Assembly: GCA_976226885.1 (NCBI GenBank)
Contig: OZ320314.1
Coordinates: 95,108,001-95,172,000, forward strand
Length of the DNA: 64,000 nucleotides
DNA from: Iphione sp. A-MEVVRFRX5
Lineage: Eukaryota
Reading direction: 5' to 3'
In this document: positions 42,816-64,000 of the stretch, in pieces
How positions within the stretch are numbered: position 1 is the first letter of the stretch
Layout: every line of letters begins with the position of its first letter
Notes under the pieces: model-generated
What the model saw: only the letters and a program-made list of their open reading frames with translations
Told to the model about the DNA's origin: nothing
Database searches by the model: none
Translations under genes and position numbers: made by a program

Positions 42816-42827
42816 GAGAGAGACAGA

Positions 42828-42830
<3 letters not shown>

Positions 42831-42858
<28 letters not shown>
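42831..42858. repeat. (GA)n microsatellite at the 3' end of the LINE
   Basis: Direct reading. Confidence 0.95.
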
Positions 42859-42865
<7 letters not shown>

Positions 42866-43329
42866 GGGGGGAAGTCAGAGATAGGTCATGGCTATAGGTA
42901 GGGATACCATGTGAGGAGCGAGGGGGAGACACTGCAAACCAGAGGATCGGAGAAAGAGAAGAGAGACAGAGAAACAGAAGGAGAGAAACATCTGCTTAGA
43001 GCGAGTTTAGGGCATGTTTGTAACAGTACAAGGTCTAAGAGATTGTGATGAGGGGAAGAGAATACGTTTAAGATGCTTGAGAGAAAAGGATAGAGGCATG
43101 TAGGAGGAGGCATTTGGAAGTCAGAAGGGAAGGGGAGGGGAGGAAGGGAGGTATGAAGGGGTGTAGGAAAAAGAAGAGAGGCAGTAATTAAGGCTCAATT
43201 CAGAGGATTATAGAGCAAATTTGAAGGACAGAAAAGATGATATGTCCTTCTCAGTTCGAACTTCATTGACACTTTACCACTTCCTCAAACTAGACAAAAA
43301 GATCGGAAGCGACGGGAAAATAGGGAAGA

Positions 43330-46106: not shown

Positions 46107-46805
46107 CTAGACTGGGAGCGCATCCAGTGAGGGTTCCTCGAAGTTGTCTGAGATGCGTTCATCGTTCGAGATGACATTCATCTTGTAAGAAGGTGGTGGG
46201 GGCAGGGTTCGACTGAGCAAATGGCGCAGGCTGGCGATGGTGCCGGCGGTGAAAGATCTGCTCCGTCTGAATCTCCTTCCCATCATCGATCCCCAGGAGG
46301 GCAAGCCGGCAATGCTACCTCGGTAGCTGCCACTGCTGCCTCCTCCCCCTGCTCCTCCGTCTCCTTCGATACTCTCATGGCTTCGTCGGTCGACGCCAGA
46401 CGGTTTCTCCCAGTCTGTGGCTACCATGTCCTGGTGGGAAGGCAGGGACACCGAGGGCCTGAGAGACAGGTGATTCAGCTGGCTATGATCGTTGTAGTCC
46501 TTATCGGGCGTCGCTGCAACGTCGCCCCAGATGCCTGCCTTATTTTTGTGGCCCATGTCGCGGAAGCCGTCCAACAGGGTCGCCAGTCGCGCGATTGGCA
46601 CCTCGTCGTCGCCGTCTCCCGCAAGATGTCTGCCGCTGTTGGTGCTGCTGCCTCGCGGCCTCACATGGGGGCTGAGCGACTCACGCGATGCGGAGCGCAA
46701 TCGGTGAGCTTGTACCGTCCGCGACAAGACCCCTGTCCACTTGGGGTGCTCCAGGCCAACTTTCTTGAACAGCCAGTAGGTCTCCCCGATGTTTGGGTGA
46801 CCGTT
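46107..46805 (-). CDS. Terminal coding exon of the same receptor (end of the cyclase domain plus a ~220-aa low-complexity C-terminal tail)
   Basis: Polypyrimidine acceptor ttcttttctcctgcgcag|AAC at 46805 is phase 0, matching the phase-0 donor at 53447. The exon encodes 'NGHPNIGETYWLFKK'; TYWL is the conserved C-terminal motif of receptor guanylyl cyclase domains and is missing from the large exon. GC-rich, coding-like composition to the stop at 46107. Confidence 0.8.
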   Translation of the reverse strand, partial: NGHPNIGETYWLFKKVGLEHPKWTGVLSRTVQAHRLRSASRESLSPHVRPRGSSTNSGRHLAGDGDDEVPIARLATLLDGFRDMGHKNKAGIWGDVAATPDKDYNDHSQLNHLSLRPSVSLPSHQDMVATDWEKPSGVDRRSHESIEGDGGAGGGGSSGSYRGSIAGLPSWGSMMGRRFRRSRSFTAGTIASLRHLLSRTLPPPPSYKMNVISNDERISDNFEEPSLDALPV

Positions 46806-49655
46806 CTGCGCAGGAGAAAAGAAGGTGAATCTACGTGTTAAAACTTCACTACCAACGGGAAGATATTCTATGATAATTGTAAGAAAAACACACAGAATTT
46901 CCAAAGTTACAGAACAAATATATATATATGCTGAGAGTAGTTAAATATCACCCCATTTATAGCATTTATTGATATGGTATGGTAGAGATGGTCTGTGTTT
47001 TTATTCTCACCACTTCTTAGTAATAAAATAAAAAAATTTTTAATGATGTCATCAGTTTAAAAATAATTCTCAGAAAAAACGATAAAATAAAAAAAAAATT
47101 GTAATACATGTATACGCAATTTGCTTCAACAAGTTTTCCTGTAAAATAAAACAGACGAGGGGGCATTTTCTTGTTTGCAGTGAGAACAAGACCGAGAAGT
47201 ATTAGCACGCCTCCAGGCTTGATGCGTTTTCGAATATTAATACACCAAGCTCAAATCAGGAGACATTTTCCGTAGGAAGTTTCCGGTTGTGCCTAGACAT
47301 TCACATCGGCAACGATGTTCAAATATTGAACCACCTGCTACAGATTGAACCGTGTGGTGCGGTGCAGTTCTAAAGGAATTCAGAAAGTATTTATGTTTAG
47401 GCGAGTTGCATACAGCAGTACCTTTGCACGTCTAAAACAGTGAGAATTTGTTCAATCATCTCTACCCCGTAAATTGTGTTCGATGCCAAGGGTTTATTTA
47501 TATCCTTCTGTTTAGTTTCCCCATTTTCAAACCGGTCAATATGTGTTCCGGTAGGCTAGCGAAATATTGTTTGGAATGCTGTGCAAATGTTTGTCATCAA
47601 CAAAACTCTCTGATGGATGGTTATAGCAGATGTTAGTATCTATATATAAACTATAATAATATATATTTCATATATGTACGTATATGTATATATGAAGGGG
47701 GAGGATTGGAACAAGTTAAATTTGTCGCTTTGGGGGGCTGCGGTAGAAATAAAAGCAATATCAAACAGAAATATTTGCGCTCTTCGATTACGATCCACCA
47801 GGTGATGAATTAAATATCTGAGATATCATATTTCAACAAGCGTGGATCCATTGACTACATAATGTGACGTTTTGCAGCTAAAACAATGTAAGCGAGATCG
47901 ATCCAGCGGGCATTAGCTGGATTATCTAGAACCAAGTATTGTGTCACTTATACTACATTAAGATTACTGAACACTCTCTCAACCGATCAACAACGCTTAA
48001 ATACATTTTAAGTGTGTAGAAAAGTGTTCATTTCCTGATTTTGTTGCCCTAACGATAGACTCATTTTTTGAACAGTACACTGGAATGGTTTGGTAAATGC
48101 CTCACCGCCTGACCATTGCATACTAAGGCCCACTTTCCATGTGTGCATGTCAGTGTGGAAGGGTCCAGAAATTCTGCGTATTTTCCAGATGAGCATGGAC
48201 AAGCACAGGCAAGCATGGAGGATTGTTTTCCATGTAAATGGGTAAGGAACAGTCAGAAATGGCCAGGATCGGTTAGTAATGGTCAGATAGCTGCCTGGGA
48301 GAGTGTGTGTTAATACGTGTGTGCCAACTTCTGTTCAAACTGTGTGTCTTGTGCCGATTGTAAAGAATTACACCCAATTCCGTTAAGAATGTATGCCTTT
48401 TGTGCAAACCACAAAGAATTACACCAAATTTAGTTAAAACGGTTCTGATATGCAAATTACATATTCATTTACATGATCTCACATATGTTAGATAGTAATC
48501 TTTCTTATTTAAACACACATTTCTCCATTCTACTCATCTGTGTCCATAAATATGCATCTGTGTCCAGAGGAATTTATGGCCCAGGTCCGCTTTCTGTCCC
48601 CGGACAGCTCCTGACACGGAGCATGTACACCAGGAAATATTCCGAATCATCGTTACTTTTTTTCAGGAACCTGGGCTTTATGCACCCCATAAACTTTCTG
48701 TACAGATAAAAAGCAGGTCTAAATGTATATTTTTCAGGGTAATTGCTTTGTGATTGACCAGTGTACTGCCTTAAGCATATGTATGTTTTATAATTCCACC
48801 AATAGATGTACCAGTGGTATTCTCCGGGACTATTAAAAACTACAGGAAGAAATAATTTTATAGTGCTAAAAAATTGTAACAGCTTTCTCATACCCCCTAG
48901 GCCAAACCATAGCTAAAAAAGAAGTAAAATATCAATTGAAATTTAATTTACACCACAAAAACCCCATCCCGGAGAATATCTTTTGGAACATCTACTGGTG
49001 GCATCAGTCATAGGTAACATGGAATGAGGCACCAATTGTCCTATGTCTATCGATTGCATATTACTACCTGTGGATTGTGGGCCATAAGTAATCATCCAAG
49101 CTGTTTGAGCATTCTCCGGTCGACCATCAATCAATGTACTAGAGGTACCTAAGAGATACCTAAGCAACGGAGCATGGCCATGCTACTAATGTATTTACAT
49201 GTGTACATGTATTTGACTGTTAAAATGCTAATAAGGACATTATATATGTAATTCTAAGTACATAGACTTGGAATAGATTACATACTTTTCTTGAAAGTAA
49301 ATGTAATGTGCTGTGCACTTTCTTGGGATACGTGATTCGTTCCAAGCATAGCCTTCGCCTAACGACATTAACACTAAATGACTCCTGTTTGCACTCATTT
49401 TCTTGATTCGTGTATTATGCATTTGTCTACAGTGAAAACCACTGTACATGTTATGAAAACTGTTGAAGAAATGCTTGTATCTTGTATCTTGTTTGTCTAG
49501 AGACGAACAATGTGATGTTCTACCCGCATCACATGGAGACAAAACTTTTTTTTTCAAATTATACAGCCCTATTTGGATTTTTTGGGGAAAACTTCCAAGA
49601 ACATACGTTTACATTTAGGATTGATATATAAAGGTTCACTGACATTAATTATTAT

Positions 49656-52600
49656 TAGTCTAGTGGCTTAGCTAAATATTTGTGCACTTTTGGAAACAAG
49701 TATGAACATTTGCATGCAGATAAATATCACCATAGTGTTTTTTTCTAGCTATAGAAGCACTTTCAAAGTGCCCCCTGGTGGTGGGTGGCACATCCTGTAT
49801 GTACCAGATGCTTTTCTATCATATATTATGAGATAATTGGTCATTAATTTTGGTCTTAATTATTCTGACTTGATTAATTATATCTCAATGCAACATAAAG
49901 TATATGGAAAGGCTATTCCAAATATTTTTAGAAAGGAAAGTCTTTTTCATCATAATTTTGTAAAGCATGGACATCATGATGTTCCTAAATTACTGTTTTT
50001 ACAAGAATAATCCCCATGTTTTTACATAAAGTACAGATTTCAATATTAAGGCATGTTCTTGAGCACATTGCCTGAAAACTAAAAGTGCGTGATGAATTAA
50101 TTGTGATATGAAGCCTATACTTTCATTGTAAAATAGTTTTTTCTACTGTTCATACAAGAAATGTTTATGTATCTTCCAAGCACATGCATGAGCACAGTGT
50201 TGTACATAATAACTCAGCATGGAAGAATCCACAATGACCTTGGCTGCAGGATTTCTAGCATCCACATTTAATACGGTTTCTGCATCCTTTTGATGCTTCA
50301 GGTAACACTCTACAATGTGGCCCTATCTTTCATTAGTTTTGGACCATCCCACTCGGCTGGATTGGCAAGTGTCATCTGAGGAGTCATAGATTTTCCCAGA
50401 TATGACTGCTTTGGTATGTTGCCTTTCGATGTGCTCCTTGAGAGCTGCTTTATAGGAGGAAGGTTGTCATGCTTAATTCTACCTTTCCTTGTGAAAATGT
50501 CCCTCCAAGCTTTATCAATGTTGGTATGTTGACTTGTCCAGTCATATAAAAGAATGACAGTATGAGAGTTTCTTCACTCATTGTGTTGGTGTTCTTTGAC
50601 AATTCACTGAATGCAGCAGTCACCTCAGGATACACTCTCCAAACTGCCCACACTGTTTTCTCTCCTCTCCAAATAAAGGTAAAAACTGTATTGTATCCTG
50701 TGAATGCATGGTAGTGATCTGGATTGTGCAAATCCTATTACCTTTGTGATGTCATGAACTGGGAAAAAGTGAAAGGTCTTCCCAGTCCTAAAGGCTACCC
50801 ACAACTCCTTAACACCAATCCTTTCAAAGTATGCCAATCTTAGGACCAAAATATCTGTATTCACTATCCTTATTAGGATTTTCTGGCTACCCTACTTTGC
50901 TGCATAGGCTGCATTAAGTATGACCCTTTTATCTGCCTCTTTGTGATTTGGGGGTCTTAGGTATTAACAGTTAGCTGGTTGAGTACACAGGACTTTTTCT
51001 CCATCAGTGGTATACACTGCTTTTTCTGTCTCTGGCCTATCTACAACAGCATGTCAAGAAACTGAATAATTCTGTTTTGTTTTCCTCTGCACAGAGAATT
51101 TTTTCCAGTTATTAGGGATTTTGGATGTTTGAAAAACTCTCCCTCTGGTTCCCTTTCCTCTCTTTTTCCTCAAATATGCTTTCAAACTTTCAGGTATGTA
51201 GGAATCCCATACCACATCAATACATGAAGTATTCTCTAGTTGTCAGTTAATGTATGGTATAAAAACTTGGGAGGCATATTCACCAAAGGTTTGTGCTGTC
51301 CTTGGCTCCAGTAAGTGCACTACAGCTGCACCGTCCAAGATTATTGAATCCACTTTTGGAGAATCAGACACAATGCTTGTAAGATCTTCCAACCAAAGCA
51401 CAAGGTCTGACCTAGTGCCTGTGTGCAGATTTCCCTGATCTGACAAACTTTGTGAATAGGGATTTTTAGCACACTTAAAACAAATCATCAATGTTAACAG
51501 CCCTGGTTCAGCATGATGCATAATCCTGTTTTTCACAAATCTGTTTCCTTTTCGAGACAGTTTCTATCACAGAAGTATATCAACTAAATCTGTAGAATCT
51601 AAGACCAGCAGACCGGCACTTTCCTCAGTAAAGCGGTGTCCCTTTCTATTCCATAGTGGACACTACAGCTGTTACATGCGTGGCAAAAGCACTTTGTACT
51701 GCAGGGAGCTGCTCATGGTATCCAAGGTCATTGTCTGCAAGGTAAAAGAATATTGTCTCAAATTCTGTCAGTATTCTGGCCCTGCCATGATCCAATGTCT
51801 GAATGTACTAGGGTTTTCTATGAGGCCTACACCACCTTCTGAGCCTTTGAACAAGGCATTATTTAGTTCATGTCCTTGGTCAGTTGATAAACCATATGAC
51901 ATATAATTTGTTTTCTGAATTACAAAATTGCCTCTCTGAAACTCACTTTCCACTTATGGGTGGATAGCCATGGCAGGGATCTGACCTGGATTGACATGAT
52001 GTGTTGCTTTTCTGATCACTTCCATGCCATGCTTGACCATGGCAACTATGTATGCAATCTCATAAAAAATGGCATCAAGGCATTCAGTGGGACGGAGTGT
52101 TGAACTTGCTGCTAGAGCAGGGCATGATTAGCACCTTAAGACCAAAATGTCTTTTATCAACATTTTCCTTGTCCACAAAAGATATCACCGTTGCTAACCA
52201 CTTGAACCATTGCAGATATAAAGACGTTGTTTCCTGGCCAAGAAGATCTCTTTTGTGCATAGTATTGCTGAGAGGAGCATCTGTATAAATATCTGGGAGT
52301 AGCTTGACCTTTTGTTTGCCTTCCTGTGGGGTTGATGGGTCAAGCAGTGTTACACCCTTGCCAATTCCAGGGACCTCATCTGTCAGAAACTGGAAGAGGG
52401 ATTTGCTAGTTCCATGAAAGGAATCATGTGCTGTAGCAGATGTTGGGTTATGATCACAGTTATCCAAGGCTCTGACTGACAAAAACCAAGCTTCATGTTA
52501 ACAGGACAGACCACTCTTTTAGCTTCACATCCTTCACAAGTACCATTGGCTAAATTAGTGATCACTTGTAACACATGGTCATAGGACACGCTCATGCTGA

Positions 52601-53047
52601 CTTGAGACATCATGCCCACCAGCCTTTTTTTGTAAGAGTACGTAGCTGCAGCCCTATGTACAAAGACAAGGGTGTTTCGTGCTCTGGTTTATGCTTGATT
52701 TTTCCAGAAGATCAATCCCTGACATGTTTCACAGCATTGAAAAGCAACAACTGAGATTTCAAATAATACATAAACATACAATCTAAGACCTCAAATTAGT
52801 GTAAAATGACCAACATTATGGAAGGAAAACTCTTTAGCATATTAAAAGTTATGACATTTGAGCTGGTTATATGCTAAAAAAGCCCTTGCTACATATAGGT
52901 GGCACCACCTGCCACCAGCGGGCACTATGAAAGTGCTTCTATAGCTAAAACAAACCACTATGGAGATATTTATTGACATGCAAAAGTTCATACTTGTTTT
53001 CAAAAGTGCACAAATAGCCACTTTTTGGGAGCTAAGCCACTAGACTA
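49656..53047 (-). mobile_element. Academ-like (XPG/FEN1-nuclease-type) DNA transposon, internally deleted and pseudogenised
   Basis: Imperfect TIRs of about 170 bp starting TAGTCTAGTGGCTTAGCT (49656-~49823 and ~52868-53047), flanked by TAT at 49653-49655 and 53048-53050. Broken minus-strand ORFs carry 'DHNPTSATAHDSFHGTS', 'GNFVIQKT..DQGHELNN..KGSEGGVGL.ENP', 'ILDGAAVVH', 'NTDILVL..LWVAFRTGK' and 'HAFTGYNTV..GEKTVW' (XPG/H3TH-like). TAG..CTA ends, a 3-bp TSD and an XPG domain fit Academ. Confidence 0.8.
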
Positions 53048-53446
53048 TATCGAGATACTGTGAAAAGGTGTTTTTTTGTAGGAAAATGGTATTTGTTTTT
53101 TGGTAGGAAAATACTATTTGTTTTCATTAGGCTTTCGTTGTGATACATGTACATATGTGTACAAAAATGCCCGTTTTGAGAATTTGATCTTCTGTTCGTT
53201 CTTGATAGTTCTCGTCTTGGTGTGTACTGTGTGTATCTATAAGTAGGATGGGAACTCTCCCTAGTGGTTATCCCTAGTTCCAGACACGTTATGACTATTA
53301 AGTAAGGTGACCACTGGAGATAGTAGGTAGTTTAGCATATATATACGTAGCAATGTGTAACAGACTTTGACCTAGTTAGGAGAATATGTGCTGCATTAGA
53401 AATCAAATGATTATCTCACCGGAAGTGTCATTAAGACCAAACGTAC

Positions 53447-56132
53447 CTCAGCAACAGTCTCCGGATTGGCCTCCATTCTTAAGTGGTCCACTGCAAAGAT
53501 TGTCAGAGCGTCTTTGAACGCCCTGGAGACCAGCAGGTGCCCTGGATGGGAGTGTCGGAGTAGAATGTGGGCCTCCTCCAAGGCCTCGCCCATGATGTGA
53601 CAGCGAGGTTCTGTGTCCTGTACCAGGCCTGTGTAGATGGACCCATGATGCAGCACCACTCGGTACGATACTGTAGGTGGGCTAAGGGTAGATGATGAGC
53701 AGCTAGGGGTCACTGACCCTACAGAGTTATCCTCAGCTACAGTTTCTTGTCCAGGAGGCGCCATTGTGTCGACGGTTGATGCTGTAAAAGCTGTAGCAGC
53801 AGCTGGTGCGTTAGCGTCGGGCTCGTTGGTGATGATCTCGAATGCTAAGCGGGTCGCCTGGATGGCTTTACGTTTCTCCTTGCTGCCGATACCGTAGATG
53901 AGGAGGTAGACCCCGCAGGTGTAGTTAATCACTGTGCACCCGTATCGTGCAGCCACTTCTTGGATGCGTGTCTCCGACGCGTTCAACCAGTGAACCGGAC
54001 GTTCCTTCCCCTTCCTGTGCGTCGCTCTGGAGCAAGACGCTGCCCTCAGAGCCAAGATACAAACACTGGAAGTGAATTCGATCTCCCTGGTGGAATTCGA
54101 CGCAGACAGACGCTGTTGAAGAGGTGGAGGTATCCGTAGGTCAGTCAGACGAGCCACTCGTTTTTCTGCCTTCCCGAGCTGCTCTTTGCACAGTTGGAGT
54201 TGCTCTTCCAGGCCAGACGTGTACTCCTCGGACGCTTCCACCATATAGTCTAACACAGAGGACCTCTTTGGATTGTGCGCCGATTTCACCATTTTCATGA
54301 CCTGTTCGCTGGAAGGCCTAATCGTTGAATTTTCTGCCCAGCAGCACTCCATAACCTGACGAACAGCTATCGGCGTGTTTTCTCCGTGTGAGGGTCGCAA
54401 CGAGTTGCTCATGATGGCTTTGATCAAGTCACTTGGCGACATGGTATCGAAATACTCGCTGTAAGGATTGCGGCGTGTGAAGATCTCTTGTAGGATGATG
54501 GCGTAACTGTACAAATCGCATGCGGGTGATGGATGTAGATTGTTTTCTGCCCTGAGCAACTCAGGAGCCGTCCAAAAGTCGAGTACGGCGGCCGAGTCCT
54601 TGCCAACCTCATCGGGTGTCTTGCGCAGGGCAAGAAGTGGGTTTCGCTTAGGATTTAAGTGCGTGTAAAGATGGCAATACTCCCAGTCGGCAATCTTGAC
54701 CGTCCATTTGAAGTCTACGAGACAGGAGGAGGACCGGAGGTGGCCGTGTGTGATACTGTGTGAGTGCAGAAAGTAGAGTCCGTTAATGATCTCCAGTGAG
54801 ATGGCAAACTTGCACTCCTTGTTTAAAAGATACTTGTCGTCCTTTAGCAGGTCATCGAGAGGGCCTTTGGAGCAATAGTCACTGACCACATAACGGTCCC
54901 CTTGTAGCTCAGCCAGCCCGTAAAAATTGAGCACGTTGTTGTGAATTATATGGTCTCTCATTGACAGCAGCAATTTCTTTGTAGGACGAGATACATTGGC
55001 CATACTCTTTATTTCGAGCAGGCGGAGGCCGACATTGAGCCCGTTCCATTTACCAGGCCACTGCAGGATGTGTTTCAACATCTGAAAGCCGTCATCGACC
55101 TCCTCTACATCCGTCAATGACCGAATTGACGACCACATGACGAATCGCGACTTACCACTCGTTGCCGACTTCGCCGTCGTATAGAAGACTATATCCTCGA
55201 TGGGGATATCCCACTCGTCGGCGTCGAGTTTCCTGTTCCGCCGTATGTGGGAAACGGCGGCGTAAATACCGATCCCTATGACAACTAAACCGGCCATAGC
55301 GACGCCGACGATGGTAGGCATGACCCACTCCTTCCCACCACGCCTTTCCTCCTGCTCAACGCGAAGTTGTTGTTTAACGACAGGCCACAGTGGACGGCCA
55401 CCACAAGTGAGCTGGTAGAGCACCAGCTCCTCTATACGCGTGGCAATAGAGCTGCTCAGCGGGACCATGTTGTGGCGGGAGCAGACATTATCAGCGCTAT
55501 CGTCGGTGGTGAACCAATGGATGTAACGGAGCAGTTCCTCCGCCGTCGAGCAGCTCCGCATGTTCATACGGACGATCATGTAAGTGAACGTAGCGATGGG
55601 GTAGGAGTCTTTTAGTTGGTGATTGGACAGATCCACGGTCAACTCATCCTCTATGATCTCGGCTGCTTTGTCCATGGCCACCTGAACTGCCACTTGTGTC
55701 GGGCTCACCACGTTGCCGAATTGGTTCAGCATGTGCGCGTACTCCAGTCCGGCTTCTACTGCATCGGCGACTACCAGATAGCCGATGCTGTTGGGCAATG
55801 ACAGCAGCAAGCCAGCCATGCCCCGGTTCTTCTGGGCCAGATAAGCGATGACCGAGGAGTCCCAAAGTCCAGACGTGAAGGTGCCGTACCGTTGTTGCCA
55901 ACCGGCCACCGACGAGAACGCCGCCGTCACCGTCCGCGTCGTTCCCGAACTGTCGCCGCGCGCGATGACGACGATGCGCTCGCCGGGAAGCCTCACGTTT
56001 CTGTTAAGGGCCTGAAGCGCTGTGTCATTCCAGTACTCATAGGTACCATTGTAGATACCGACGGCAACATCCAACGACAGCACCAGTGATTGGTTGGTAT
56101 CTAGTTCCAGATTGTAGCCAAAGACGATGGCA
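53447..56132 (-). CDS. Large internal exon of a single-pass receptor: PstS-like ectodomain + TM + kinase-homology domain + degenerate guanylyl cyclase domain
   Basis: Lies within the 923-aa ORF 53411-56182. Acceptor ttgtctgtctcgttgcag|T at 56132 and donor GAG|gtacgt at 53447. PstS motifs 'GIYNGTYEYWND..LQALN', 'IARGDSSGTT', 'NSIGYL', 'YPIATFTYMIV'. TM 'MPTIVGVAMAGLVVIGIGIYAAV'. KHD 'HNNVLNFYG', 'GLYFLHS', 'HGHLRSSSCLVD', 'WTAPELLR', 'DLYSYAIILQEI'. Cyclase-like 'RVVLHHGSIYTGLV..EPRCHIMGE'. Confidence 0.9.
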
Positions 56133-58740
56133 CTGCAACGAGACAGACAATGTGTAGCAGGTGTGTATACTGATATTTTCAAACATGGTACAAAGCCAAC
56201 AAGAGTGAGATGAAATATACAAAGTTACAGGGAAAATAGTGTCCGGTTAGAATAATCAAATGACCTGCATGGTTGAGACCATGTGTTCCCATGTCTGTCG
56301 TGCTTAATGCAGATGAACATATGCGCAGTTGATTCCACCCATTTCCCATCTCTCCTGTTGCAACTAAAATATATTTCAATTGAGGAGAAAACATTCATTC
56401 TCACTGCGTTGCATTTCTTGCACGTTTCATGGGTAGAAATCTCAAAGAACTTATAGGATGGGTGTTAGGTTAAGAGCCAACCCATCCCTGCACGACAAGG
56501 GACAATGTAAAGATGGACGAGACAGCCTAGGGACAGAGATAGGGAGTGGTCTTCAGGGGAATTAGGAGGTGTTCAATTTAGTGAAAATTAGTAAACATAT
56601 GCATATATCTATCTGCGTGAAACATATTGTCGATATTTAATTCATAATTGGGCATTTCAAAAATAGGATTGATTAAGAGAGCATGTTATGGTTATGTTGG
56701 TCTACGGACCCCTACCGCTCATGGGCGAAAGCCTGGCTTGGACATTTTTACCAGTTTTTTACATTTTACTGTTATATGGAGACACCCTATTCAGATGCGA
56801 GCATCATGATGATGCACTTACTGATCCCTTTTAAATACACAATGTACACTGTGCATCTAGCTGCTTTCGAGTTGTTGAGGGAATTCGGGGTCTCGATCTA
56901 ATGATTCGCAATATTGACAGACATGCTCTCTTATCGCCTTTTTGATGTGCAGGGGCATCCGAGCTCGAGGATTCAAAATGGACGGGGACGATTGCAGTAG
57001 ATTGAGGATGCTCATAAAGCATTCTCCCAAAAGTTTTCATAGTCCTGTTTGGCTACAAAACGCAACGAATAGACTGACTCGGTGAACAATAGAAGGCATT
57101 TTTAGACTCAATGAGGTTCTGACAGCCACAACAAGTGTTACCAACCCGCCAGAACTACAGATAGATTTATGGCAACTCTTAATAAATCGATATTATATAG
57201 GTATTATATACATATGATAAACCCTCTGACGTCCTAATCAAATACGTCTCTAAAAACAGTACAAAAAATAACCTAAAATATTTTGCCCAAACCTGCATTC
57301 AGGGAAGTATAAGTAAACATTATCTCCTGAGTGTGACCTTAGGCTCCGACATTTGTGGCTTCTATGTGACCGCTGTAGTTAGTATAAGGCCTGCCTTCCT
57401 GCATTCGACTTGTAAAATGTATACGGGGTCTGTGCGCCAAGGTATGTTGTTCGAAGTCTGTTTCTGGATACAAACATAGAGGGGTGTTCCATGTACATTT
57501 GTACATCTGAGACAGTCACACAACAGTGCCCAAAACTCATTGAAAACTGTATTACAACAACCTATAGAACTCATGTAAACCCACAAAACAGAGCAAATAA
57601 CTCATTAGAACTGCCCAACGGTGTGGATACTTGATTAAAAGTCACACAACCGAGTAACTCACAAAATGTGTGGAAAGGTGTTTTTTCATACACACCTAAC
57701 ATGATTATTTGAAATGAAATAGAACACTACTGTCACAGTTTACGGTATACGGTGTCTGTGGTATGCAAGAAAATTTATGGATATTTCTGACAGTGGATAC
57801 ACGGACACAGACAGATAGACCGGATATCTAGAAAAGCCTGGTTCACTGTCATAATATTATATTTTTACATAGACCCATATGTAGGTTTTAGAAGATCGCA
57901 CACATGGAAACCCGTCCTAGAGGTTGTTTACTCTGAGCAATCCCTCCATTCAGTGAACTGTGTTGGCTGGGGCTTGTAAGGGCCAGAATATTATGCTAGA
58001 CTTTATCTGGAGCAGAGCAGATTCAGCTCGAGAATATCACTTAGGCTGAGCTGCCTTATCCTTTTTTTGTTATCACTACTTTGTATGTTGACTTGTTCAA
58101 CTTGACGTTCAACCTCTTCCCAAGCGGTCCTGTCGCCGCTTGACTATGCTGTGAAATAACAAGGTAGATCGGAACAGAAACTTACTCTGTACTGAGAACC
58201 TACCGGCAAACCTTGCCCTGCAAACATCAAATCACTTCAGGCTTTAAATATATGCATGCATCATTTATTCAATAATACCCATCAATCCTAAATAAATGCA
58301 TGTGAGTATATGCAGTAATATGCTCCTTTAGGTTATTAATATTTCACTATAGAGCTCTGACTAAGATCGTCCTTTCTGGAATGGTTTGCATATTTAGACC
58401 CATGTTAGAAAGACCTGATTTGCTAACTCTCCACAAGACTCAAAATTCAGGTAAAGGCGGTAAAACGGGACATGGACAATATGTAAAAAAGGAATATTTA
58501 TTCTGGCTTTTGTAAATTTTCCTCCGGCTCGAATTATCATGACGTGATTTCCTATACATCCAGGAGACTGTCGATAATACAGACCAATTTACCCTTGACA
58601 ATACCCGGGCAATTCTATGGCTAAATCCATTTCACCTAATTGTAATAACTTTGATCAGAATGAAAGCCACTCCAAGTTTATACTGGTAGAAGCATTTACA
58701 TAGATAGTAATATTACCCGCTAATGCAGTAATGTATTATT

Positions 58741-61700
58741 GTGCCACCAGAAATCGCCCTAGGGGTGCCTATATTAGTAGCTGCTCACCTTGAACCACCC
58801 CTTTCCCGCATGGCTGGTAGAGGTGAAAACATTTCGAGTGACACTACTACAGCAGGCGGATTGCACGTGCAGCGGTCACAGAGTTGGCAAGGACGAGGAA
58901 ACGCAGAAGAAAATTTCTGGCCTTGGCACTGGTCTTGAGAAGGTTCTACAGCTAATTACGAAATTAGAAGAATGCTCCGCTGAAGCCAGATGTATCGTAA
59001 CCCGCTCAAAGTCAATTCAGAAGAAAGACTCTGCTGAGAAGGGATCTTCGTCTGTTCCTTAACCTCTAGACACTGACCCCACTCAACAGGTCCGGTATTG
59101 AAGAAAATGACTCAGACGACAACAAACCTTCACCTCACCAGCTTCACACAGAGGCAGGAGAGCTTGCTGAACTGTTAGTGGCAGCAATCTATCCAACAAA
59201 CCCTTCAGTCTCTCACTTTCCGTTTCCACTATCAGTCACCAAATATATTCCTAATATGTCATTCGAGATCTCAGTACGTGGTTGGGGTCTCGATTGGCCC
59301 CTACTGGTGATGAAACATCAAGGTCTCTATTATTTTGATGTTAGTCTCCCGTTTGTGACAAGGCACTGCTCTGTGTACCTCCAAGACATATCTACATATC
59401 TAATACGGTTTTGCATGATGAACATACCTTGGCTGACAGTTGTGGCTTACTGGATGACTATATTTTTGTAATCGAAGCAGATAAAGCTTGTAGCGCCTTT
59501 CAGTCTATTACAAACATTATTAGACAATGTGATCTTATCACTGCTGACGATAAGGCCATCAAAGGCATTTGCTTGGCTTGGCATACAATTTGACATTGAA
59601 GCAGCAACAATGACTATTCCTAAAGTTAAGCTGGATAAGCTGCTCTCCATGGTTCAATACATTGTGTATAGGAAAAGGTGTACCTTCAAAAAAGTTCAAC
59701 AATTATTGAGTCTAGTAAATCATGTGGCTAGGTGCATACAGCCAGCCTGGTTATTTGTCTCGCAGATTCTTGAACAATACAGCCCTGAAATCGCGGCAGG
59801 CCATATACATGTACTAATAACAGACCAGTTTAAAAAAGACTTATACTGGTTTGTTCATTTTATCCCACAGTTCTCTGGTATGGCCCTATTTCCTAGGACC
59901 ATGTATCTCGATGAAATATTATATTGTGATGCCTCTTTGTCAGGCCTCGGGGCGTACAGCAACAAAATGTACTATGCTCTCCCCCTTTTTACCTCCATTC
60001 AAACATTTAACATCACAGAAATAACACTTATTCCAAGCAATTCTAAAAATTCATCACTTTCAATTACAGTTTGCTGTGATAATCAGGCCTCTGTTAATGC
60101 ATATAATTCAGGTTGTATAAGAGATCCGGTATTACAGGCGGCAACTCGCTCTTATGGTTTCATCAGACAAAATTCAACATTCATGTTAAATTTGTTCACA
60201 AGACAGGGGCTCAGATGGTGTACGTAGATGCTATGTACAAGGCATTAGTTGAGCAGTTCTGTATGAAGAACCCAGGCTTCTCATGCATCCATCTTCATCA
60301 TAATCTTCTTAATCATATACTTAATTCTTAACTCTTTAACTGTCATTCTGTTTGCTGATGATACAGTGATCTACACTCATGCTAAATCATGCAAGGAAGT
60401 GGCCAGCAAACTGTAGGGGGCTTGTAAGGAACTGGAGCAGTGGTGTAACTCACATAAGTTAACAATTAATGCCAGCAAATCTAAAATAATGATAATAGGA
60501 AAACAAAATTCTGATACTTATGAGCCAAGAGTGAAACTCTACAATGAAGTACTTAAAATGGTGAACAGTTACAGATACCTAGGAGTAACTATTGATAACA
60601 AACTGACTTTTAATACAGAGGCGGACATATTATTAAAACGGTTATCCATGAAAATATATTAATTCAATAAAATCAAAGGCAATGTATTATCTGGAACTGC
60701 ACTGATGCTCTATAAGTCCACCAGTCAACCACTGATAGACTATAGCACAATATATCTTACATCATGTAGAAATAAGAAACTGAGCAAAATACAAGCAATG
60801 CAAAATAGATCTCTAAGAATCATATTCAATCTTGGAAAGAAAAGAAAGTTAAGAGCCTATGAAATTCATAACAGGGATCTGCACTTGGAACTTGGAATTG
60901 GTAGCACATATGTAAGACGAACCCATATTACCATTAAAATGATGTTTAGAGCAATAAAAATTGGAGTACTTCCCCTAAAACCAAACACTATTACCAGGGA
61001 TGCTGATGGACTACTGCTGTATCAAATGATCCCAAGGAAAGAAATCTGTAGGAAGGGTATCATATATAAGGGAGCACAACTATGGAATCAACTGGATCCA
61101 CTCTTCAGAAACATAACCGACTCAACCAACTTTAATAAATTAACAATACAGACATGCTATACCTTGGCTGGACCACTCTACTGAACTCTTAGAATGTATA
61201 GAAACAACATGTGTATATAATGAATCACATTTTCCCCTCTTCATATGTAATTACTTCATCACCTGACAATATCAATTAAATTATCATGTATTGTCTTGGA
61301 AATGCATTCCTCACCATGTAAACCGTCTACTAGGACAATAGTCAGAATGAATAAAATCTATTATTATTATCATTATTAACTCTTGATTTGCAGATCCCAG
61401 GCTACAGGTGTTTGCAGCCAAGGCAGCTTGATGCCAAAGGCAAGCAGTAACTGATGCAACAGACAAAGCTCATCAGAGGATGCTGGCACTGGCCCTTGGT
61501 TTCTGTGTACATTACAACATAGACTATTCAGCAGATGAATCTTGACGATTTCCTTATATTTATAGAGTACCTCGCAAAGTATTTTACACTGGTTGTTGCC
61601 TCCCAGCACATATCTGCATTAAGGTTCTTCTTCCTACAGCTACTGCTCCAGAATAAAATTCTAAATCATGATAAGGCCCTGAAGTCTGTGCAGAAGACCT

Positions 61701-62400
61701 CCCCTGATAAGATAGATCGCAAAGATCCTATTACGCTCGAGATGCTGTTCAACATTGTTTACTTATTGGATGGAGACCACATGGTTGGTCCTGAGCTTAA
61801 AGCAATTTTTCTTCTTTCAATTTTTAGTTGTTTTGTCAATCAAATTTATTTCCTAAGGAAGGGCAGCCTTTTGATGTTAGCAGGCATTTGACTAGGGGTG
61901 ATATTATAAGTAAAGACAAGTACTTTTTGTTAAGTGGTCTAAGACAAATTCTACCACTTAAAAAAATGTATGTTCATGCTATTCCGGACTAAACATCGTG
62001 TCCCCTTGAAGCCCTTAAGTGTGTAATTAGGGCAGATCCTACAATGTCAGATGATCAGCCCCTGTTCCGACTTCCTGGTGTGACCTCGTCATTTACAATA
62101 GATGCAGTAGCAATGTACAGCATTCAAGGTCCACCTCAAGGAACTCCAGATCAACGATACCAGGTACATGCTTCACAGCTTTCTTAGGGATGGAGCGACA
62201 TTACTCCAGGCAATGGGTGTGATGGAGCAGGAGATAAGAGCACAAAGAACATGGTCTACAATCTCTTTGTCTAAGACAGGACACCTTTATGATCACTTCT
62301 CTATTGAGATAACTCCTCTAGCAGGACAAACTCGGGGAAAAAGCAAAATGTACTTCTTGCCTGATATTGCTCCTTCGATATATTTCTTACATGGTTTTTG
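58741..62400 (+). mobile_element. Tyrosine-recombinase retrotransposon (DIRS/Ngaro-like), degenerate; RT, RNase H and YR fragments
   Basis: RT 'LDWPLL..GLYYFDVSLPF' and 'LLDDYIF'. 'WLGIQFD..MTIPKVKLDK', 'KDLYWFVHFIPQFSG' and RNase H 'LYCDASLSGLGAY'. YR 'KDPITLEML', 'QPLFRLPG', 'HSFLRDGAT..MGV..IRAQRTWS'. Boundaries approximate. Confidence 0.8.
60337..61375 (+). mobile_element. 5'-truncated LINE (CR1/L2-like RT C-terminus + 3' UTR) inserted into the DIRS/Ngaro element
   Basis: 'ILFADDTVIY', 'YRYLGVTIDNKLTF' and 'LYKS..QPLIDYS' motifs. AATAAA followed by an (ATT)n tail at 61350-61376. TTAACTCTT is duplicated at 60328-60336 and 61376-61384 (TSD). Confidence 0.85.
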
Positions 62401-63379
62401 AAAGCATACTTGGTAAATACTACGACCAGTGAAGGGACTAAGACATTTTGTCAGCAACTGTTGGTGGCCCCGTTTTATGAGTAGATGCTATTGCAGCACA
62501 TACACCATTTGAAATAGTCAACTGAAGATTGAAATATCGAAACATGATTCTGTTTGCTTTGATAGGGAAACATCTACTGTAATGGGATGCGAACGGTAAA
62601 ATGAGGTAAGTCAAAATGACAGCTTATGGTTGATAATCCAGTGGCTTGACGCGTCTGCATCTTCCTCAAGTGTGACCTCCCCCCCCCCCCTCAAGGTATG
62701 TTACACCTTGATCAGGTGTGATACAATTCAGAAGATATGTGTTTCATATTATCCCTTGCTGTGACACGACCTCAAACTATAAATAAATGAAGTGCATTTT
62801 CAAGTTGAAATATGCGTTTTTTGGATTTAGGGAGCGCATCGCCCGATCCCTCGAATTGCCCTTATTTCTGCTTCCTTTCAATATTAAATTATACAGAAAA
62901 ATCCATGGAAATGTTCCAAAACACCACTGGTTGCCCTTTGAGTCCGGATGCCCACAGCATCGGTTGCAAAGCTATTCGACAAACTATTTGTCAATTTCAG
63001 TGCTGACATACCACTCGAGGTATCACCACATCAAATTTGACCTCAAAACATGACACTTTTGAAACATAAGGGCATATCAGTACGTTGTAAGTGCATTATC
63101 TCTGATATTATCTCAGCTATTGAAAGCAGTGCTGCAAGTACTAGATACCAGCTGGTGGACTAGTACCATTCTGGCAGATTCACCGGTAGCTGATTCACAT
63201 TGCAATAAACATCTTTAGGACAGATAGAGATCTCTTAAGCAACTGATGAGGTGATATCCTTGTGGAATCATAAGTTAACTGCAGTGTTATATTACATATG
63301 CGCATGGAAAACTCTACTGTCCATGCACATTTATCTTCTCTGTTCCTGTTCGCTTTCTAGCACAATCTCTTAGTATGTC

Positions 63380-63531
63380 TGTCTACCATTTCATATGTGT
63401 AAACCCTAGTGGCTGAACACTGTAGAAATTGTGATACTGTGGATGTCTCTGTGATGTCTTTGTCTACCGTTTCATGTGCGCAAACCCTAGTAACCGAACA
63501 CTGTGAGTAATTGTGATACTGTGGATGTCTT
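63380..63531. repeat. Tandem duplication, ~81-bp unit x ~1.9
   Basis: TGTCTACCRTTTCAT..AAACCCTAGT..GAACACTGT..AATTGTGATACTGTGGATGTCT starts at 63380 and at 63461. It lies upstream of an (ATTCA)n LINE-type tail near 63848-63866. Confidence 0.85.
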
Positions 63532-63936
63532 TTGCTTATATTTCTGTTGGTTGCCTGATTGCTGATTAATTGTCTGTATACCCGCTTGTAGTAGTTTTGT
63601 CTGTATGTTCCACCTGTTATGCTCGCTGTTTGCTCTGCCGTATGGATGTACCACTGCAAGCTCATATCTCTACGTGTATTATACGTTTCATGTTCAATTG
63701 TCGCCATGCACAATCCTCTGTTACTCTGCTGTTTTTGTTCATTGCATGGATGTAACATTGTATCTTGTATCTGTCCTCCATGTGTGTATATATGTTCGAT
63801 TAACCAGGAAAACTTTGTACAAGGACGAAGACTGTGGTTTATTAAGGAATTCAATTCAATTCAATTATCATTTGACTGTATCATGAAGGCGACGAAAATT
63901 ATTTGCAAAACGTTTTACAAAACGGTTTATATATTA

Positions 63937-64000
63937 CAGTGGGACCTCTCCAATCCGGACACCCTGCGTTCTTCCCCAATTCGTCCACATTGTAGAGGTG
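63937..64000. mobile_element. Start of a pogo/Tigger-like MITE, truncated by the window end
   Basis: TA followed by CAGTGGGACCTCTCCAATCCGGACACC, a typical terminus of pogo-type MITEs; the other end is outside the window. Confidence 0.5.

What the first reader, a model, noticed from the sequence alone, without database searches (positions are those of the whole stretch)
53447..54110. The cyclase domain appears catalytically dead although the reading frame is fully intact
Seen, by manual alignment to the canonical GC consensus: SVTIYFSDIVGF becomes SVCILALRAASC (first metal Asp to Arg), and KVETIGDAYMV becomes VINYTCGVYLL (guanine-specifying Glu and second metal Asp lost). RYCLFGDTVNTASR becomes RCHIMGEALEEAHI (specificity Cys and transition-state Asn/Arg lost). 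A ~50-aa Ala/Ser/Thr/Pro insert also sits inside the domain. The KHD is a pseudokinase as expected (VGLR for VAxK, DWE for DFG). An 895-codon stop-free exon with clean splice sites suggests purifying selection. Inference: a double-pseudoenzyme receptor that signals by scaffolding or by heterodimerising with and regulating an active GC, rather than a pseudogene.
Basis: partly seen in the sequence, partly recalled or inferred. Interest (0 to 1): 0.7.

Follow-up and report, generated by a model that had tools for sequence, protein, structure and literature searches.

The report
Receptor with a dead cyclase domain
This invertebrate gene encodes a cell-surface receptor with a bacterial-type phosphate-binding outer domain and an inner guanylyl-cyclase domain that keeps its fold but has lost every catalytic residue, yet has been conserved over long evolutionary time, so it probably signals without making cGMP.

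Summary
On the minus strand, exon 56132..53447 (895 codons) encodes part of a PstS-like ectodomain, a transmembrane helix, a kinase-homology pseudokinase, a signalling helix and a class III cyclase-like domain.

A family-wide MAFFT alignment and an independent profile-profile alignment agree on the six catalytic positions. Canonical D-E-D-C-N-R reads R-N-G-H-E-I here. AlphaFold2 still predicts a confident cyclase fold, whose best PDB matches are sGC and GC-A.

It does not look like a pseudogene:
- Five orthologous loci (about 50-57% identity) keep the open frame, the same splice donor position and a similarly degenerate site.
- In the cyclase-like domain pN is about half of a saturated pS.

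The gene sits in a well-supported 25-member clade of a large protostome PstS-receptor-cyclase family. No member of that clade keeps all six residues, whereas other family members (Owenia, Priapulus) do. In the degenerate clades constraint has moved from the cyclase domain (20-25% identity, against 62% in canonical members) to the kinase-homology domain (49-59% against 31%), which gained an invariant QWPGKW motif.

Because both catalytic half-sites are lost, it cannot complement a partner. A heterodimer could only be inhibitory.

Not tested: expression (no RNA runs were listed), and exon 1 (it lies outside the window). The scan had already noted the ectodomain on this same window (s1-325144).

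The parts
53447..56132 (-). Large internal coding exon (895 codons plus 1 base). It encodes the C-lobe of the PstS-like ectodomain, the TM helix, the KHD, the signalling helix and most of the cyclase-like domain.
   Evidence: ORF. Acceptor and donor read. The donor position is conserved in orthologous loci L001-L005.
55358..56131 (-). PstS-like (PBP_like_2) ectodomain, C-terminal two thirds. The phosphate-ligand residues equivalent to E. coli PstS R135, D137, S139, G140 and T141 are kept (codons 55940-55960).
   Evidence: Pfam PF12849, 44.9 bits. phmmer to PstS structures 2z22 and 1ixh, E 1e-23 to 6e-21, with alignment. Codons.
55253..55312 (-). Single transmembrane helix (IVGVAMAGLVVIGIGIYAAV).
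   Evidence: A hydrophobic 20-mer aligned to the TM segment of GC-A. Coordinates.
54293..55096 (-). Kinase-homology pseudokinase domain: beta3 Lys -> Arg (55022-55024), HGHL in place of HRD (54740-54745), DWE in place of DFG (54680-54688), and the clade-specific invariant QWPGKW motif.
   Evidence: Pfam PK_Tyr_Ser-Thr, E 3e-28. Alignment to GC-A. Motif comparison.
54134..54253 (-). Signalling helix / coiled coil between the KHD and the cyclase-like domain.
   Evidence: AF2 helix, residues 2-41 of the model, pLDDT 93-98. It aligns to the same helix of canonical members.
53447..54082 (-). Cyclase-like (class III nucleotidyl cyclase fold) domain without catalytic residues: R713 (54044-54046), N753 (53924-53926), G757 (53912-53914), H862 (53597-53599), E869 (53576-53578), I873 (53564-53566).
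   Evidence: AF2 pLDDT 82.9. Foldseek to sGC, GC-A, Rv1625c and RhGC, prob 1.0. Pfam 21.2 bits against a cut-off of 21.9.
53696..53800 (-). Ala/Ser/Thr/Pro-rich insert between helix alpha3 and strand beta4, predicted to be disordered. It is longer than in any orthologue.
   Evidence: pLDDT below 50 at model residues 153-187. Alignment gap in the orthologues. No convincing internal splice signals.
46806..53446 (-). Intron (about 6.6 kb).
   Evidence: Bounded by the donor GAG|gtacgt and the acceptor ctgcgcag|AAC. An intron of 4.6 to 7 kb lies at the same codon in L001 and L002.
46107..46805 (-). Terminal coding exon (232 aa plus stop). It holds the last beta-strand of the cyclase fold (GETYWL), a low-complexity linker, and a conserved C-terminal motif (46110-46295: RSRSFT..GTIA.LRH.L.RTLPP.PSYKMNVIS..ERISD..EEPSLD.LPV).
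   Evidence: tblastx to L001, 75 bits. Translation. Sequence. The tail is 72% identical to L001 and L003, and an ETYWL exon is also present in L002.

Best explanation
This is a functional gene for a single-pass receptor of the receptor-guanylyl-cyclase superfamily. It carries a PstS-type anion-binding ectodomain instead of the usual ANF-receptor ectodomain.

Shown: its C-terminal cyclase domain is a pseudo-cyclase. The fold, the preceding signalling helix and the final TYWL strand are kept, but both metal aspartates, both base-specifying residues and both transition-state residues are replaced.

Inferred from the established two-half-site mechanism of class III cyclases: it cannot make cGMP or cAMP as a homodimer, and it cannot complement any partner.

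Shown: the dead domain has been kept under purifying selection, weaker than on the rest of the protein, in an old clade. In that clade selective constraint has shifted to the kinase-homology domain, which acquired an invariant QWPGKW motif. A conserved C-terminal tail motif is also present.

Inferred mechanism: ligand binding in the ectodomain is relayed through the TM helix, the KHD and the signalling helix of a dimer. The dead cyclase domain serves as the dimerisation and conformational-relay module. The output is non-catalytic: recruitment or release of partners at the KHD surface and at the conserved tail, which has a basophilic RxRxxT site and a hydrophobic LPV C-terminus.
For: - Architecture: Pfam and PDB sequence hits.
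- All six catalytic positions are replaced, by two independent alignments.
- The cyclase fold is predicted with pLDDT 82.9. Its best matches are sGC and GC-A cyclase domains, at 12-17% identity.
- Orthologues P0001, P0002, P0003, P0009 and P0012 carry RNGHES, KDGYDR, KDGYEK, VDGHEN and KDGYET at the same positions.
- These orthologues form a 99%-supported clade with the window, inside a 25-row clade (99%) with no fully canonical member.
- Splice acceptor and donor positions and the terminal ETYWL exon are conserved.
- pN/pS in the cyclase-like domain is 0.44-0.52 for the nearest pairs (each 95% CI within 0.36-0.62) and 0.72 (CI 0.62-0.83) against the most distant orthologue L002. The KHD gives 0.21-0.26. 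pS is saturated, so these are upper bounds on omega.
- Two haplotigs of the nearest orthologue differ by 11 synonymous and 3 nonsynonymous changes.
- The conservation ranking is reversed. In the window clade the KHD is 59% and the cyclase domain 25% identical. In canonical PstS cyclases the KHD is 31% and the cyclase domain 62%.
- QWPGKW..G[LI]RL is invariant in the degenerate clade and absent from canonical members.
- The C-terminal 62 residues are 72% identical to the orthologue, while the linker before them cannot be aligned.
Against: - There is no expression evidence: no RNA run was listed for this sequence.
- Exon 1 (signal peptide and N-lobe of the ectodomain) is not in the window, so completeness of this particular copy is unproven.
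- The cyclase-like domain evolves about twice as fast as the KHD. It reaches only 25% identity to the most distant orthologue, so part of it may be drifting.
- No partner, ligand or output has been shown. The tail motif has no match among the fetched proteins.
- Enzymatic inactivity is inferred from sequence, not measured.
Confidence: 0.6

Rival explanations
1. Decoy or dominant-negative subunit. The protein's main role is to heterodimerise, through the signalling helix and the cyclase-like domain, with a canonical PstS-ectodomain guanylyl cyclase of the same cell. Because it supplies neither metal aspartates nor the Glu/Cys/Asn/Arg half, both composite sites of the heterodimer are dead. It would therefore lower cGMP output and tune sensitivity to the shared ligand.
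For: - Class III cyclase sites are built across the dimer interface. Complementary heterodimers exist among receptor cyclases: ODR-1/DAF-11 (PMC5225109).
- The dimerisation helix and the fold are retained.
- Canonical PstS cyclases with all six residues exist in the family.
- One of them (P0047) lies in the same ENA assembly as the window's nearest orthologue.
Against: - The gain of a strongly conserved KHD motif and of a conserved tail is not needed for a mere poison subunit.
- The degenerate clade is as diversified as the canonical one, which suggests autonomous roles.
- Contig coverage differs (28x against 44x), so it is not proven that the two genes are in the same organism.
- No co-expression data exist.
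Confidence: 0.25
2. Pseudogene or decaying copy. The gene, or at least its cyclase-like part, is no longer functional in this genome, and the open frame is a remnant.
For: - Pfam score below threshold.
- A lineage-specific low-complexity insert.
- Exon 1 was not found in the 7.9 kb upstream within the window.
- No RNA data.
- The cyclase-like domain is the fastest-evolving domain.
Against: - 895 plus 232 codons are open, with canonical splice sites.
- The chance of the long ORF is about 5e-17.
- The same degenerate state, frame and intron positions are kept in five other loci whose synonymous sites are saturated.
- pN is well below pS.
- The predicted fold is confident.
- The nearest orthologue L001 also has no exon 1 within 10 kb, so a long first intron is the simpler reading.
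Confidence: 0.07
3. A still-active or re-purposed enzyme. The domain makes a cyclic nucleotide with unorthodox residues, or binds a nucleotide as an allosteric ligand, as the pseudosymmetric site of adenylyl cyclases and sGC does.
For: - The fold and the pocket-forming elements are retained.
- Several replacement residues are themselves conserved in the clade: Gly at the Asp-2 position, and Glu/Asp at the Asn position.
Against: - There is no acidic residue at either metal position.
- All four substrate and transition-state residues are lost.
- The domain is the least conserved in the protein, unlike any active cyclase in the family.
Confidence: 0.05

Closest known systems
Receptor guanylyl cyclases (GC-A/NPR1, GC-C, C. 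elegans GCYs)
   Same: Single-pass topology. The order is ectodomain, TM, kinase-homology pseudokinase, signalling helix, class III cyclase fold. The KHD aligns to GC-A at E 4e-30. The cyclase-like domain superposes on the GC-A cyclase domain.
   Different: The ectodomain is PstS/PBP_like_2 (a type II periplasmic binding protein), not the ANF-receptor type. All catalytic residues of the cyclase are replaced. There is a long C-terminal tail with its own conserved motif.
Half-degenerate cyclase subunits that work as obligate heterodimers (sGC alpha/beta; ODR-1/DAF-11, PMC5225109)
   Same: Loss of canonical residues in a class III cyclase domain that is nevertheless retained. The dimeric architecture is built on a signalling helix.
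   Different: Those subunits each keep one complementary half-site (metal Asps, or Glu/Cys/Asn/Arg), so the pair forms one active site. Here both halves are lost, so complementation is impossible.
Canonical PstS-ectodomain guanylyl cyclases of protostomes (e.g. Owenia fusiformis CAH1793096.1 = P0031; Priapulus caudatus XP_014672517.1 = P0032)
   Same: Same family and architecture. They share the DW[EQ] motif in the KHD and the PstS ligand residues.
   Different: They keep D-E-D-C-N-R, and the cyclase domain is their most conserved domain (62% identity). They lack the QWPGKW motif.
NPR-C / NPR3 clearance receptor, and pseudokinase receptors in general
   Same: The concept is the same: a member of a catalytic receptor family that signals or buffers ligand without the family's enzymatic output (own knowledge; a pseudokinase review, PMC13519141, was listed but not read).
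   Different: NPR-C has lost the whole intracellular module. Here the complete module is kept as two consecutive pseudoenzyme domains.

Membership tests
Class III nucleotidyl cyclase catalytic domain (Pfam PF00211) | Profile match above Pfam's gathering score | tested here: not met
   21.2 bits for the domain alone and 17.9 bits in the whole ORF, against a cut-off of 21.9.
Class III nucleotidyl cyclase catalytic domain (Pfam PF00211) | Beta-alpha-beta-beta-alpha-beta cyclase fold | tested here: met
   AF2 pLDDT 82.9, pTM 0.75. Foldseek prob 1.0 and TM about 0.7 to isolated GC and AC catalytic domains. hhalign prob 99.2% to canonical members.
Class III nucleotidyl cyclase catalytic domain (Pfam PF00211) | Two metal-binding aspartates | tested here: not met
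   R713 (or a gap) and G757.
Class III nucleotidyl cyclase catalytic domain (Pfam PF00211) | Base-specifying pair (Glu/Cys for GTP, Lys/Asp for ATP) | tested here: not met
   N753 and H862.
Class III nucleotidyl cyclase catalytic domain (Pfam PF00211) | Transition-state Asn and Arg in helix alpha4 | tested here: not met
   E869 and I873.
Receptor guanylyl cyclase architecture | TM helix, then kinase-homology domain, signalling helix and C-terminal cyclase-fold domain, in that order | tested here: met
   Alignment to GC-A over residues 291-766.
Receptor guanylyl cyclase architecture | ANF-receptor-type ectodomain | tested here: not met
   The ectodomain matches PBP_like_2/PstS instead.
Receptor guanylyl cyclase architecture | Guanylyl cyclase activity | not testable with these tools
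   This needs an enzyme assay. The sequence predicts none.
PstS / PBP_like_2 phosphate-binding proteins | Profile match and C-lobe phosphate ligands (R135, D137, S139, G140, T141 of E. coli PstS; numbering from own knowledge) | tested here: met
   PF12849 scores 44.9 bits against a cut-off of 27. The motif ARGDSSGTT aligns to RRADGSGTS of PstS.
PstS / PBP_like_2 phosphate-binding proteins | N-lobe phosphate ligands (T10/F11, S38, D56) and a signal peptide | not testable with these tools
   Exon 1 is outside the window. In orthologue L002 the exon is present with GAGASFP, GSS and AGSD motifs.
Pseudokinase (KHD) | Kinase fold lacking at least one of the beta3 Lys, the HRD Asp and the DFG Asp/Gly context | tested here: met
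   PF07714 at E 3e-28. R387 replaces Lys, HGHL replaces HRD, DWE replaces DFG.
Complementing heterodimeric cyclase subunit (sGC alpha or beta type, ODR-1/DAF-11 type) | Retention of one complete half-site | tested here: not met
   Neither the metal half (R, G) nor the substrate and transition-state half (N, H, E, I) is retained.

The most novel reading that the evidence does not exclude
An old lophotrochozoan clade of cell-surface receptors senses an extracellular oxyanion (probably phosphate) through a PstS-type ectodomain. This clade has switched its output from cGMP synthesis to non-catalytic signalling through two tandem pseudoenzymes: a pseudokinase that gained the invariant QWPGKW surface, and a pseudo-cyclase kept as the dimerisation and relay module. 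It would be a previously undescribed signalling mode in the receptor-cyclase superfamily and a candidate animal extracellular phosphate receptor.
Probability: 0.35. Interest if true: 0.8.

Novelty: new variant of a known kind. Interest (0 to 1): 0.6.

Why it matters
Receptor guanylyl cyclases are defined by their enzymatic output. The known departures are subunits that lost half a site and work as complementary heterodimers. A whole, diversified and conserved clade has lost both half-sites, kept the fold, and at the same time tightened constraint on the neighbouring pseudokinase. That would be a clear natural case of a receptor enzyme family turning into a non-catalytic receptor.

This gives pseudoenzyme biology a tractable example with built-in active paralogues as controls.

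Together with the PstS-type ectodomain, which keeps the phosphate ligands, it also points to a possible extracellular phosphate or oxyanion sensor in marine invertebrates. I know of no such receptor in animals (own knowledge). Seven full-text searches found no paper describing this family.

Tried and rejected
- **RNA evidence.** The look-up of sequencing runs listed no run. Expression and the splice junctions are untested.
- **Exon 1.** tblastn with the N-termini of four relatives, an HMM of those N-termini against all six frames, and the L002 exon-1 peptide all found nothing in 56133-64000. They also found nothing in the 10 kb upstream of orthologue L001. Exon 1 is taken to lie beyond the window.
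- **Proper dN/dS.** The nearest orthologue is 57% identical and pS is above 0.75, i.e. saturated. Only uncorrected pN/pS upper bounds and a haplotig comparison with few changes could be given.
- **Hidden intron in the insert.** The only GT...AG combinations have poor donors (GTCGAC, GTAGCT), so this was rejected as unlikely. It cannot be excluded without cDNA.
- **Charge swap as a cross-subunit salt bridge.** Asp-1 -> Arg/Lys paired with Asn -> Glu/Asp recurs in several clades. But acidic residues at the Asn position also occur where position 1 is acidic. The idea is not supported as a rule and was not pursued.
- **Tail motif.** It has no match among 160 fetched proteins and no Pfam hit.
- **Literature.** Seven searches for PstS-ectodomain cyclases or dead-cyclase receptors returned nothing relevant.
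- **Atlas.** The search gave only family-level leads: PBP_like_2 plus kinase clusters in Mollusca and in protists.
- **Joined model.** The spliced exon 2 plus exon 3 protein was never built or submitted to any search or fold tool. The exons were analysed separately, by reference.
Full report
**What is there**

The window carries a 923-codon ORF at 53411..56182 on the minus strand. Reading the DNA shows that the real unit is an exon from 56132 to 53447. It has a polypyrimidine/AG acceptor (ttgcag|T, phase 2) and a consensus donor (GAG|gtacgt, phase 0), and holds 895 codons. An open frame of that length has a chance probability of about 5e-17 at this base composition.

Pfam finds PBP_like_2 (44.9 bits), a protein-kinase fold (E 3e-28) and a sub-threshold Guanylate_cyc match of 17.9 bits in the ORF. 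The cyclase match is 21.2 bits for the domain alone, against a cut-off of 21.9. The PDB sequence search aligns residues 291-766 to human GC-A/NPR1 (E 4e-30) and residues 20-227 to bacterial PstS (E about 1e-20 to 1e-23).

The architecture is therefore: PstS-like ectodomain, one TM helix, kinase-homology domain, signalling helix, cyclase-like domain.

**Gene model**

tblastx against the locus of the nearest orthologue (L001) revealed a conserved downstream exon. In the window it runs from 46805 (acceptor ctgcgcag|AAC) to the stop at 46109-46107.

It begins NGHPNIGETYWL, which is the last beta-strand of the cyclase fold. A low-complexity linker follows. It ends in a 62-residue block that is 72% identical to the orthologue and finishes in LPV. 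L002 has the same ETYWL exon.

The donor after the large exon sits at the same codon in L001, L002, L003, L004 and L005.

The first exon (signal peptide plus the N-lobe of PstS) was found in L002, 4.6 kb upstream of its large exon. It was not found in the window's remaining 7.9 kb, nor within 10 kb upstream in L001. It probably lies beyond the window end.

The joined exon 2 plus exon 3 protein was never built or sent to any tool. The exons were handled separately, by reference.

**Check of the observation**

I collected the family with a word-indexed search and an exhaustive phmmer search. The latter gave 213 cluster representatives at E <= 1e-30.

A MAFFT alignment of 55 C-terminal regions includes members with textbook motifs (FSDIVGFT, KVETIGDAY, RYCLFGDTVNTASR). 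It places R, N, G, H, E and I of the window protein at the positions of metal Asp 1, substrate Glu, metal Asp 2, substrate Cys, transition-state Asn and transition-state Arg.

An independent profile-profile alignment compared the six-member orthologue clade with twelve canonical members (hhalign, prob 99.2%, E 1.5e-19). It gives the same mapping for five positions. It puts Asp 1 opposite a gap, in a strand that holds no acidic residue at all. phmmer against the RhGC and sGC-beta structures shows the same helix alpha4 replacement.

The KHD claims are also correct. The beta3 Lys is Arg, the catalytic loop reads HGHL (GC-A has HGNL), and DFG is DWE.

Two corrections are needed:
- The insert is about 35 disordered residues by AF2, and about 30 residues longer than in the nearest orthologue.
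- The domain continues into the next exon.

**Fold**

I ran AlphaFold2 on window:53447-54256:- with the 54-row family alignment. It gives pLDDT 82.9 and pTM 0.75, with a long N-terminal helix and a beta-alpha-beta-beta-alpha-beta core. Only the insert is of low confidence.

Foldseek against the PDB returns human sGC, the GC-A cyclase domain, Rv1625c, RhGC and mammalian adenylyl cyclases. Probability is 1.0, TM is about 0.7 on the isolated domains, and sequence identity is 12-17%. The fold is kept although the chemistry is gone.

**Pseudogene or selected gene?**

The nearest relatives form a 99%-supported clade with the window protein. They are P0001 (57%), P0002 (50%) and P0003 (49%), with identities, together with the more distant P0009 and P0012.

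All have the long open frame and similarly degenerate sites: RNGHES, KDGYDR, KDGYEK, VDGHEN and KDGYET. Gly at the Asp-2 position is invariant in this clade.

Synonymous sites between these loci are saturated (pS 0.76-0.97). In the cyclase-like domain pN is 0.38-0.41 between the window, L001 and L004, giving pN/pS of 0.44-0.52 with bootstrap confidence intervals within 0.36-0.62. Against the most distant orthologue L002, pN is 0.56 and pN/pS is 0.72 (CI 0.62-0.83). The KHD gives 0.21-0.26. Because pS is saturated, these ratios are upper bounds on omega.

Two haplotigs of the P0001 species differ by 11 synonymous and 3 nonsynonymous changes over the exon, with none nonsynonymous in the cyclase-like part. 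These are few events.

The domain is thus under purifying selection, relaxed about two-fold relative to the KHD. Expression could not be tested, because no RNA run was listed.

**Family context**

The maximum-likelihood tree of the ectodomain-to-coiled-coil region was built from 48 rows with IQ-TREE (quick search, SH-aLRT support).
- It separates ordinary receptor cyclases as an outgroup.
- It unites 45 PstS-ectodomain proteins at 100% support.
- Within these, 12 rows form a weakly resolved group (SH-aLRT 88) of which ten keep D-E-D-C-N-R. They include Owenia fusiformis and Priapulus caudatus proteins.
- One 99%-supported clade of 25 rows contains no member with all six residues.
- That clade includes RefSeq models from Haliotis, Liolophura, Argopecten, Bulinus and the nemertean Tubulanus. 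They show different partial losses, for example DNDVDS, EADCKQ and EQDCNT.

Degeneration was therefore progressive, and the window's subclade is an end state.

Mean pairwise identity by domain shows a reversal of constraint:

| Group | Ectodomain | KHD | Coiled coil | Cyclase domain |
|---|---|---|---|---|
| Canonical members | 0.39 | 0.31 | 0.49 | 0.62 |
| Window clade | 0.43 | 0.59 | 0.35 | 0.25 |
| Mollusc/nemertean degenerate group | 0.40 | 0.49 | 0.42 | 0.20 |

The KHD N-lobe motif QWPGK[WY]..G[LI]RL is invariant in the degenerate clade and absent from canonical members.

**Mechanism**

In class III cyclases each active site is composite. One protomer gives the two metal aspartates. The other gives the base-specifying pair and the Asn/Arg of helix alpha4. 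This is established knowledge from the adenylyl cyclase C1/C2 and sGC alpha/beta structures. The ODR-1/DAF-11 receptor pair works the same way (PMC5225109).

The window protein has lost both halves. As a homodimer it has no site. In a heterodimer with an active protomer, both composite sites would lack one half. It can therefore not be a complementing subunit. Through its cyclase domain it could only silence a partner.

The gain of a strictly conserved KHD motif and a conserved C-terminal motif is not needed for a mere poison subunit. The tail motif has an RxRxxT basophilic site and a hydrophobic C-terminus. I therefore favour an autonomous non-catalytic receptor, in which the dead cyclase domain is the dimerisation and relay module and the KHD and tail are the output surfaces (confidence about 0.6).

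The decoy model comes second, at about 0.25. A canonical PstS cyclase (P0047) is present in the same ENA assembly as the nearest orthologue. Its contig coverage differs, though (28x against 44x), so it is not proven that both genes are in the same organism.

Residual enzymatic or nucleotide-binding function (about 0.05) and pseudogene status of this particular copy (about 0.07) remain possible.

**Ectodomain**

The part encoded in the window keeps the residues that align to R135, D137, S139, G140 and T141 of E. coli PstS (residue numbering from my own knowledge of the PstS structure). The N-lobe ligands are in the missing exon, but they are present in L002.

**Novelty**

Databases name relatives 'atrial natriuretic peptide receptor 2-like', 'retinal guanylyl cyclase 2-like' or 'gcy-29-like'. 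Seven full-text searches found no paper on PstS-ectodomain receptor cyclases or on receptor cyclases with fully dead cyclase domains.

I rate it a new variant of a known kind. The concept (a pseudoenzyme in a receptor) is known, but this double pseudoenzyme with reversed constraint is, as far as I could find, undescribed.

**Limits**
- The organism is unknown. The relatives suggest a lophotrochozoan, probably a mollusc.
- There are no expression data.
- Exon 1 was not seen.
- No biochemical test was possible.

Noticed in passing
window 54990-55060 (-), KHD N-lobe: The motif LQWPGK[WY]..G[LI]RL is invariant in every member of the degenerate clade examined. It is absent or variable in canonical PstS cyclases. 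It is a candidate new interaction or nucleotide-binding surface, gained as the cyclase decayed.
   Followed up: partly
window 46110-46295 (-): The C-terminal 62 residues are 72% identical to the orthologue, although the preceding ~150-residue linker cannot be aligned. They contain RSRSFT (a basophilic-kinase type site), PPxPSY, and a terminal LPV that could be a PDZ-type ligand. There is no Pfam hit and no match among the fetched proteins.
   Followed up: partly
window 3938-5269 (+): A single-exon 443-aa ORF with a rhodopsin-family 7TM domain (PF00001, E 1e-25). It is a neighbouring GPCR gene.
   Followed up: no
window 40170-42897 (+): A non-LTR retrotransposon remnant with an endonuclease/exonuclease/phosphatase ORF and a reverse-transcriptase ORF. 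It coincides with the strong GC and AT skew at 40-44 kb.
   Followed up: no
L007 (ENA ERZ25767047, ctg37524) against L001 and L003 (same assembly): A PstS-ectodomain cyclase with all six catalytic residues (P0047) occurs in the same assembly as the window's nearest dead-cyclase orthologue. Coverage is 28x against 42-44x, so it is not established that both are in the same genome.
   Followed up: partly
Atlas clusters: Clusters that combine PBP_like_2 with kinase-like domains, or a phosphonate/phosphate-binding domain with kinase-like and cyclase domains, are reported from Amoebozoa, Chlorophyta and diatoms as well as Mollusca. The architecture may be much older than animals, or may have been assembled repeatedly.
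   Followed up: no
window 52084-52482 (-) and 46221-46841 (+): A 132-aa ORF lies inside the intron. A 206-aa ORF lies antisense to the GC-rich terminal exon. Neither was examined for homology, and both are probably spurious.
   Followed up: no
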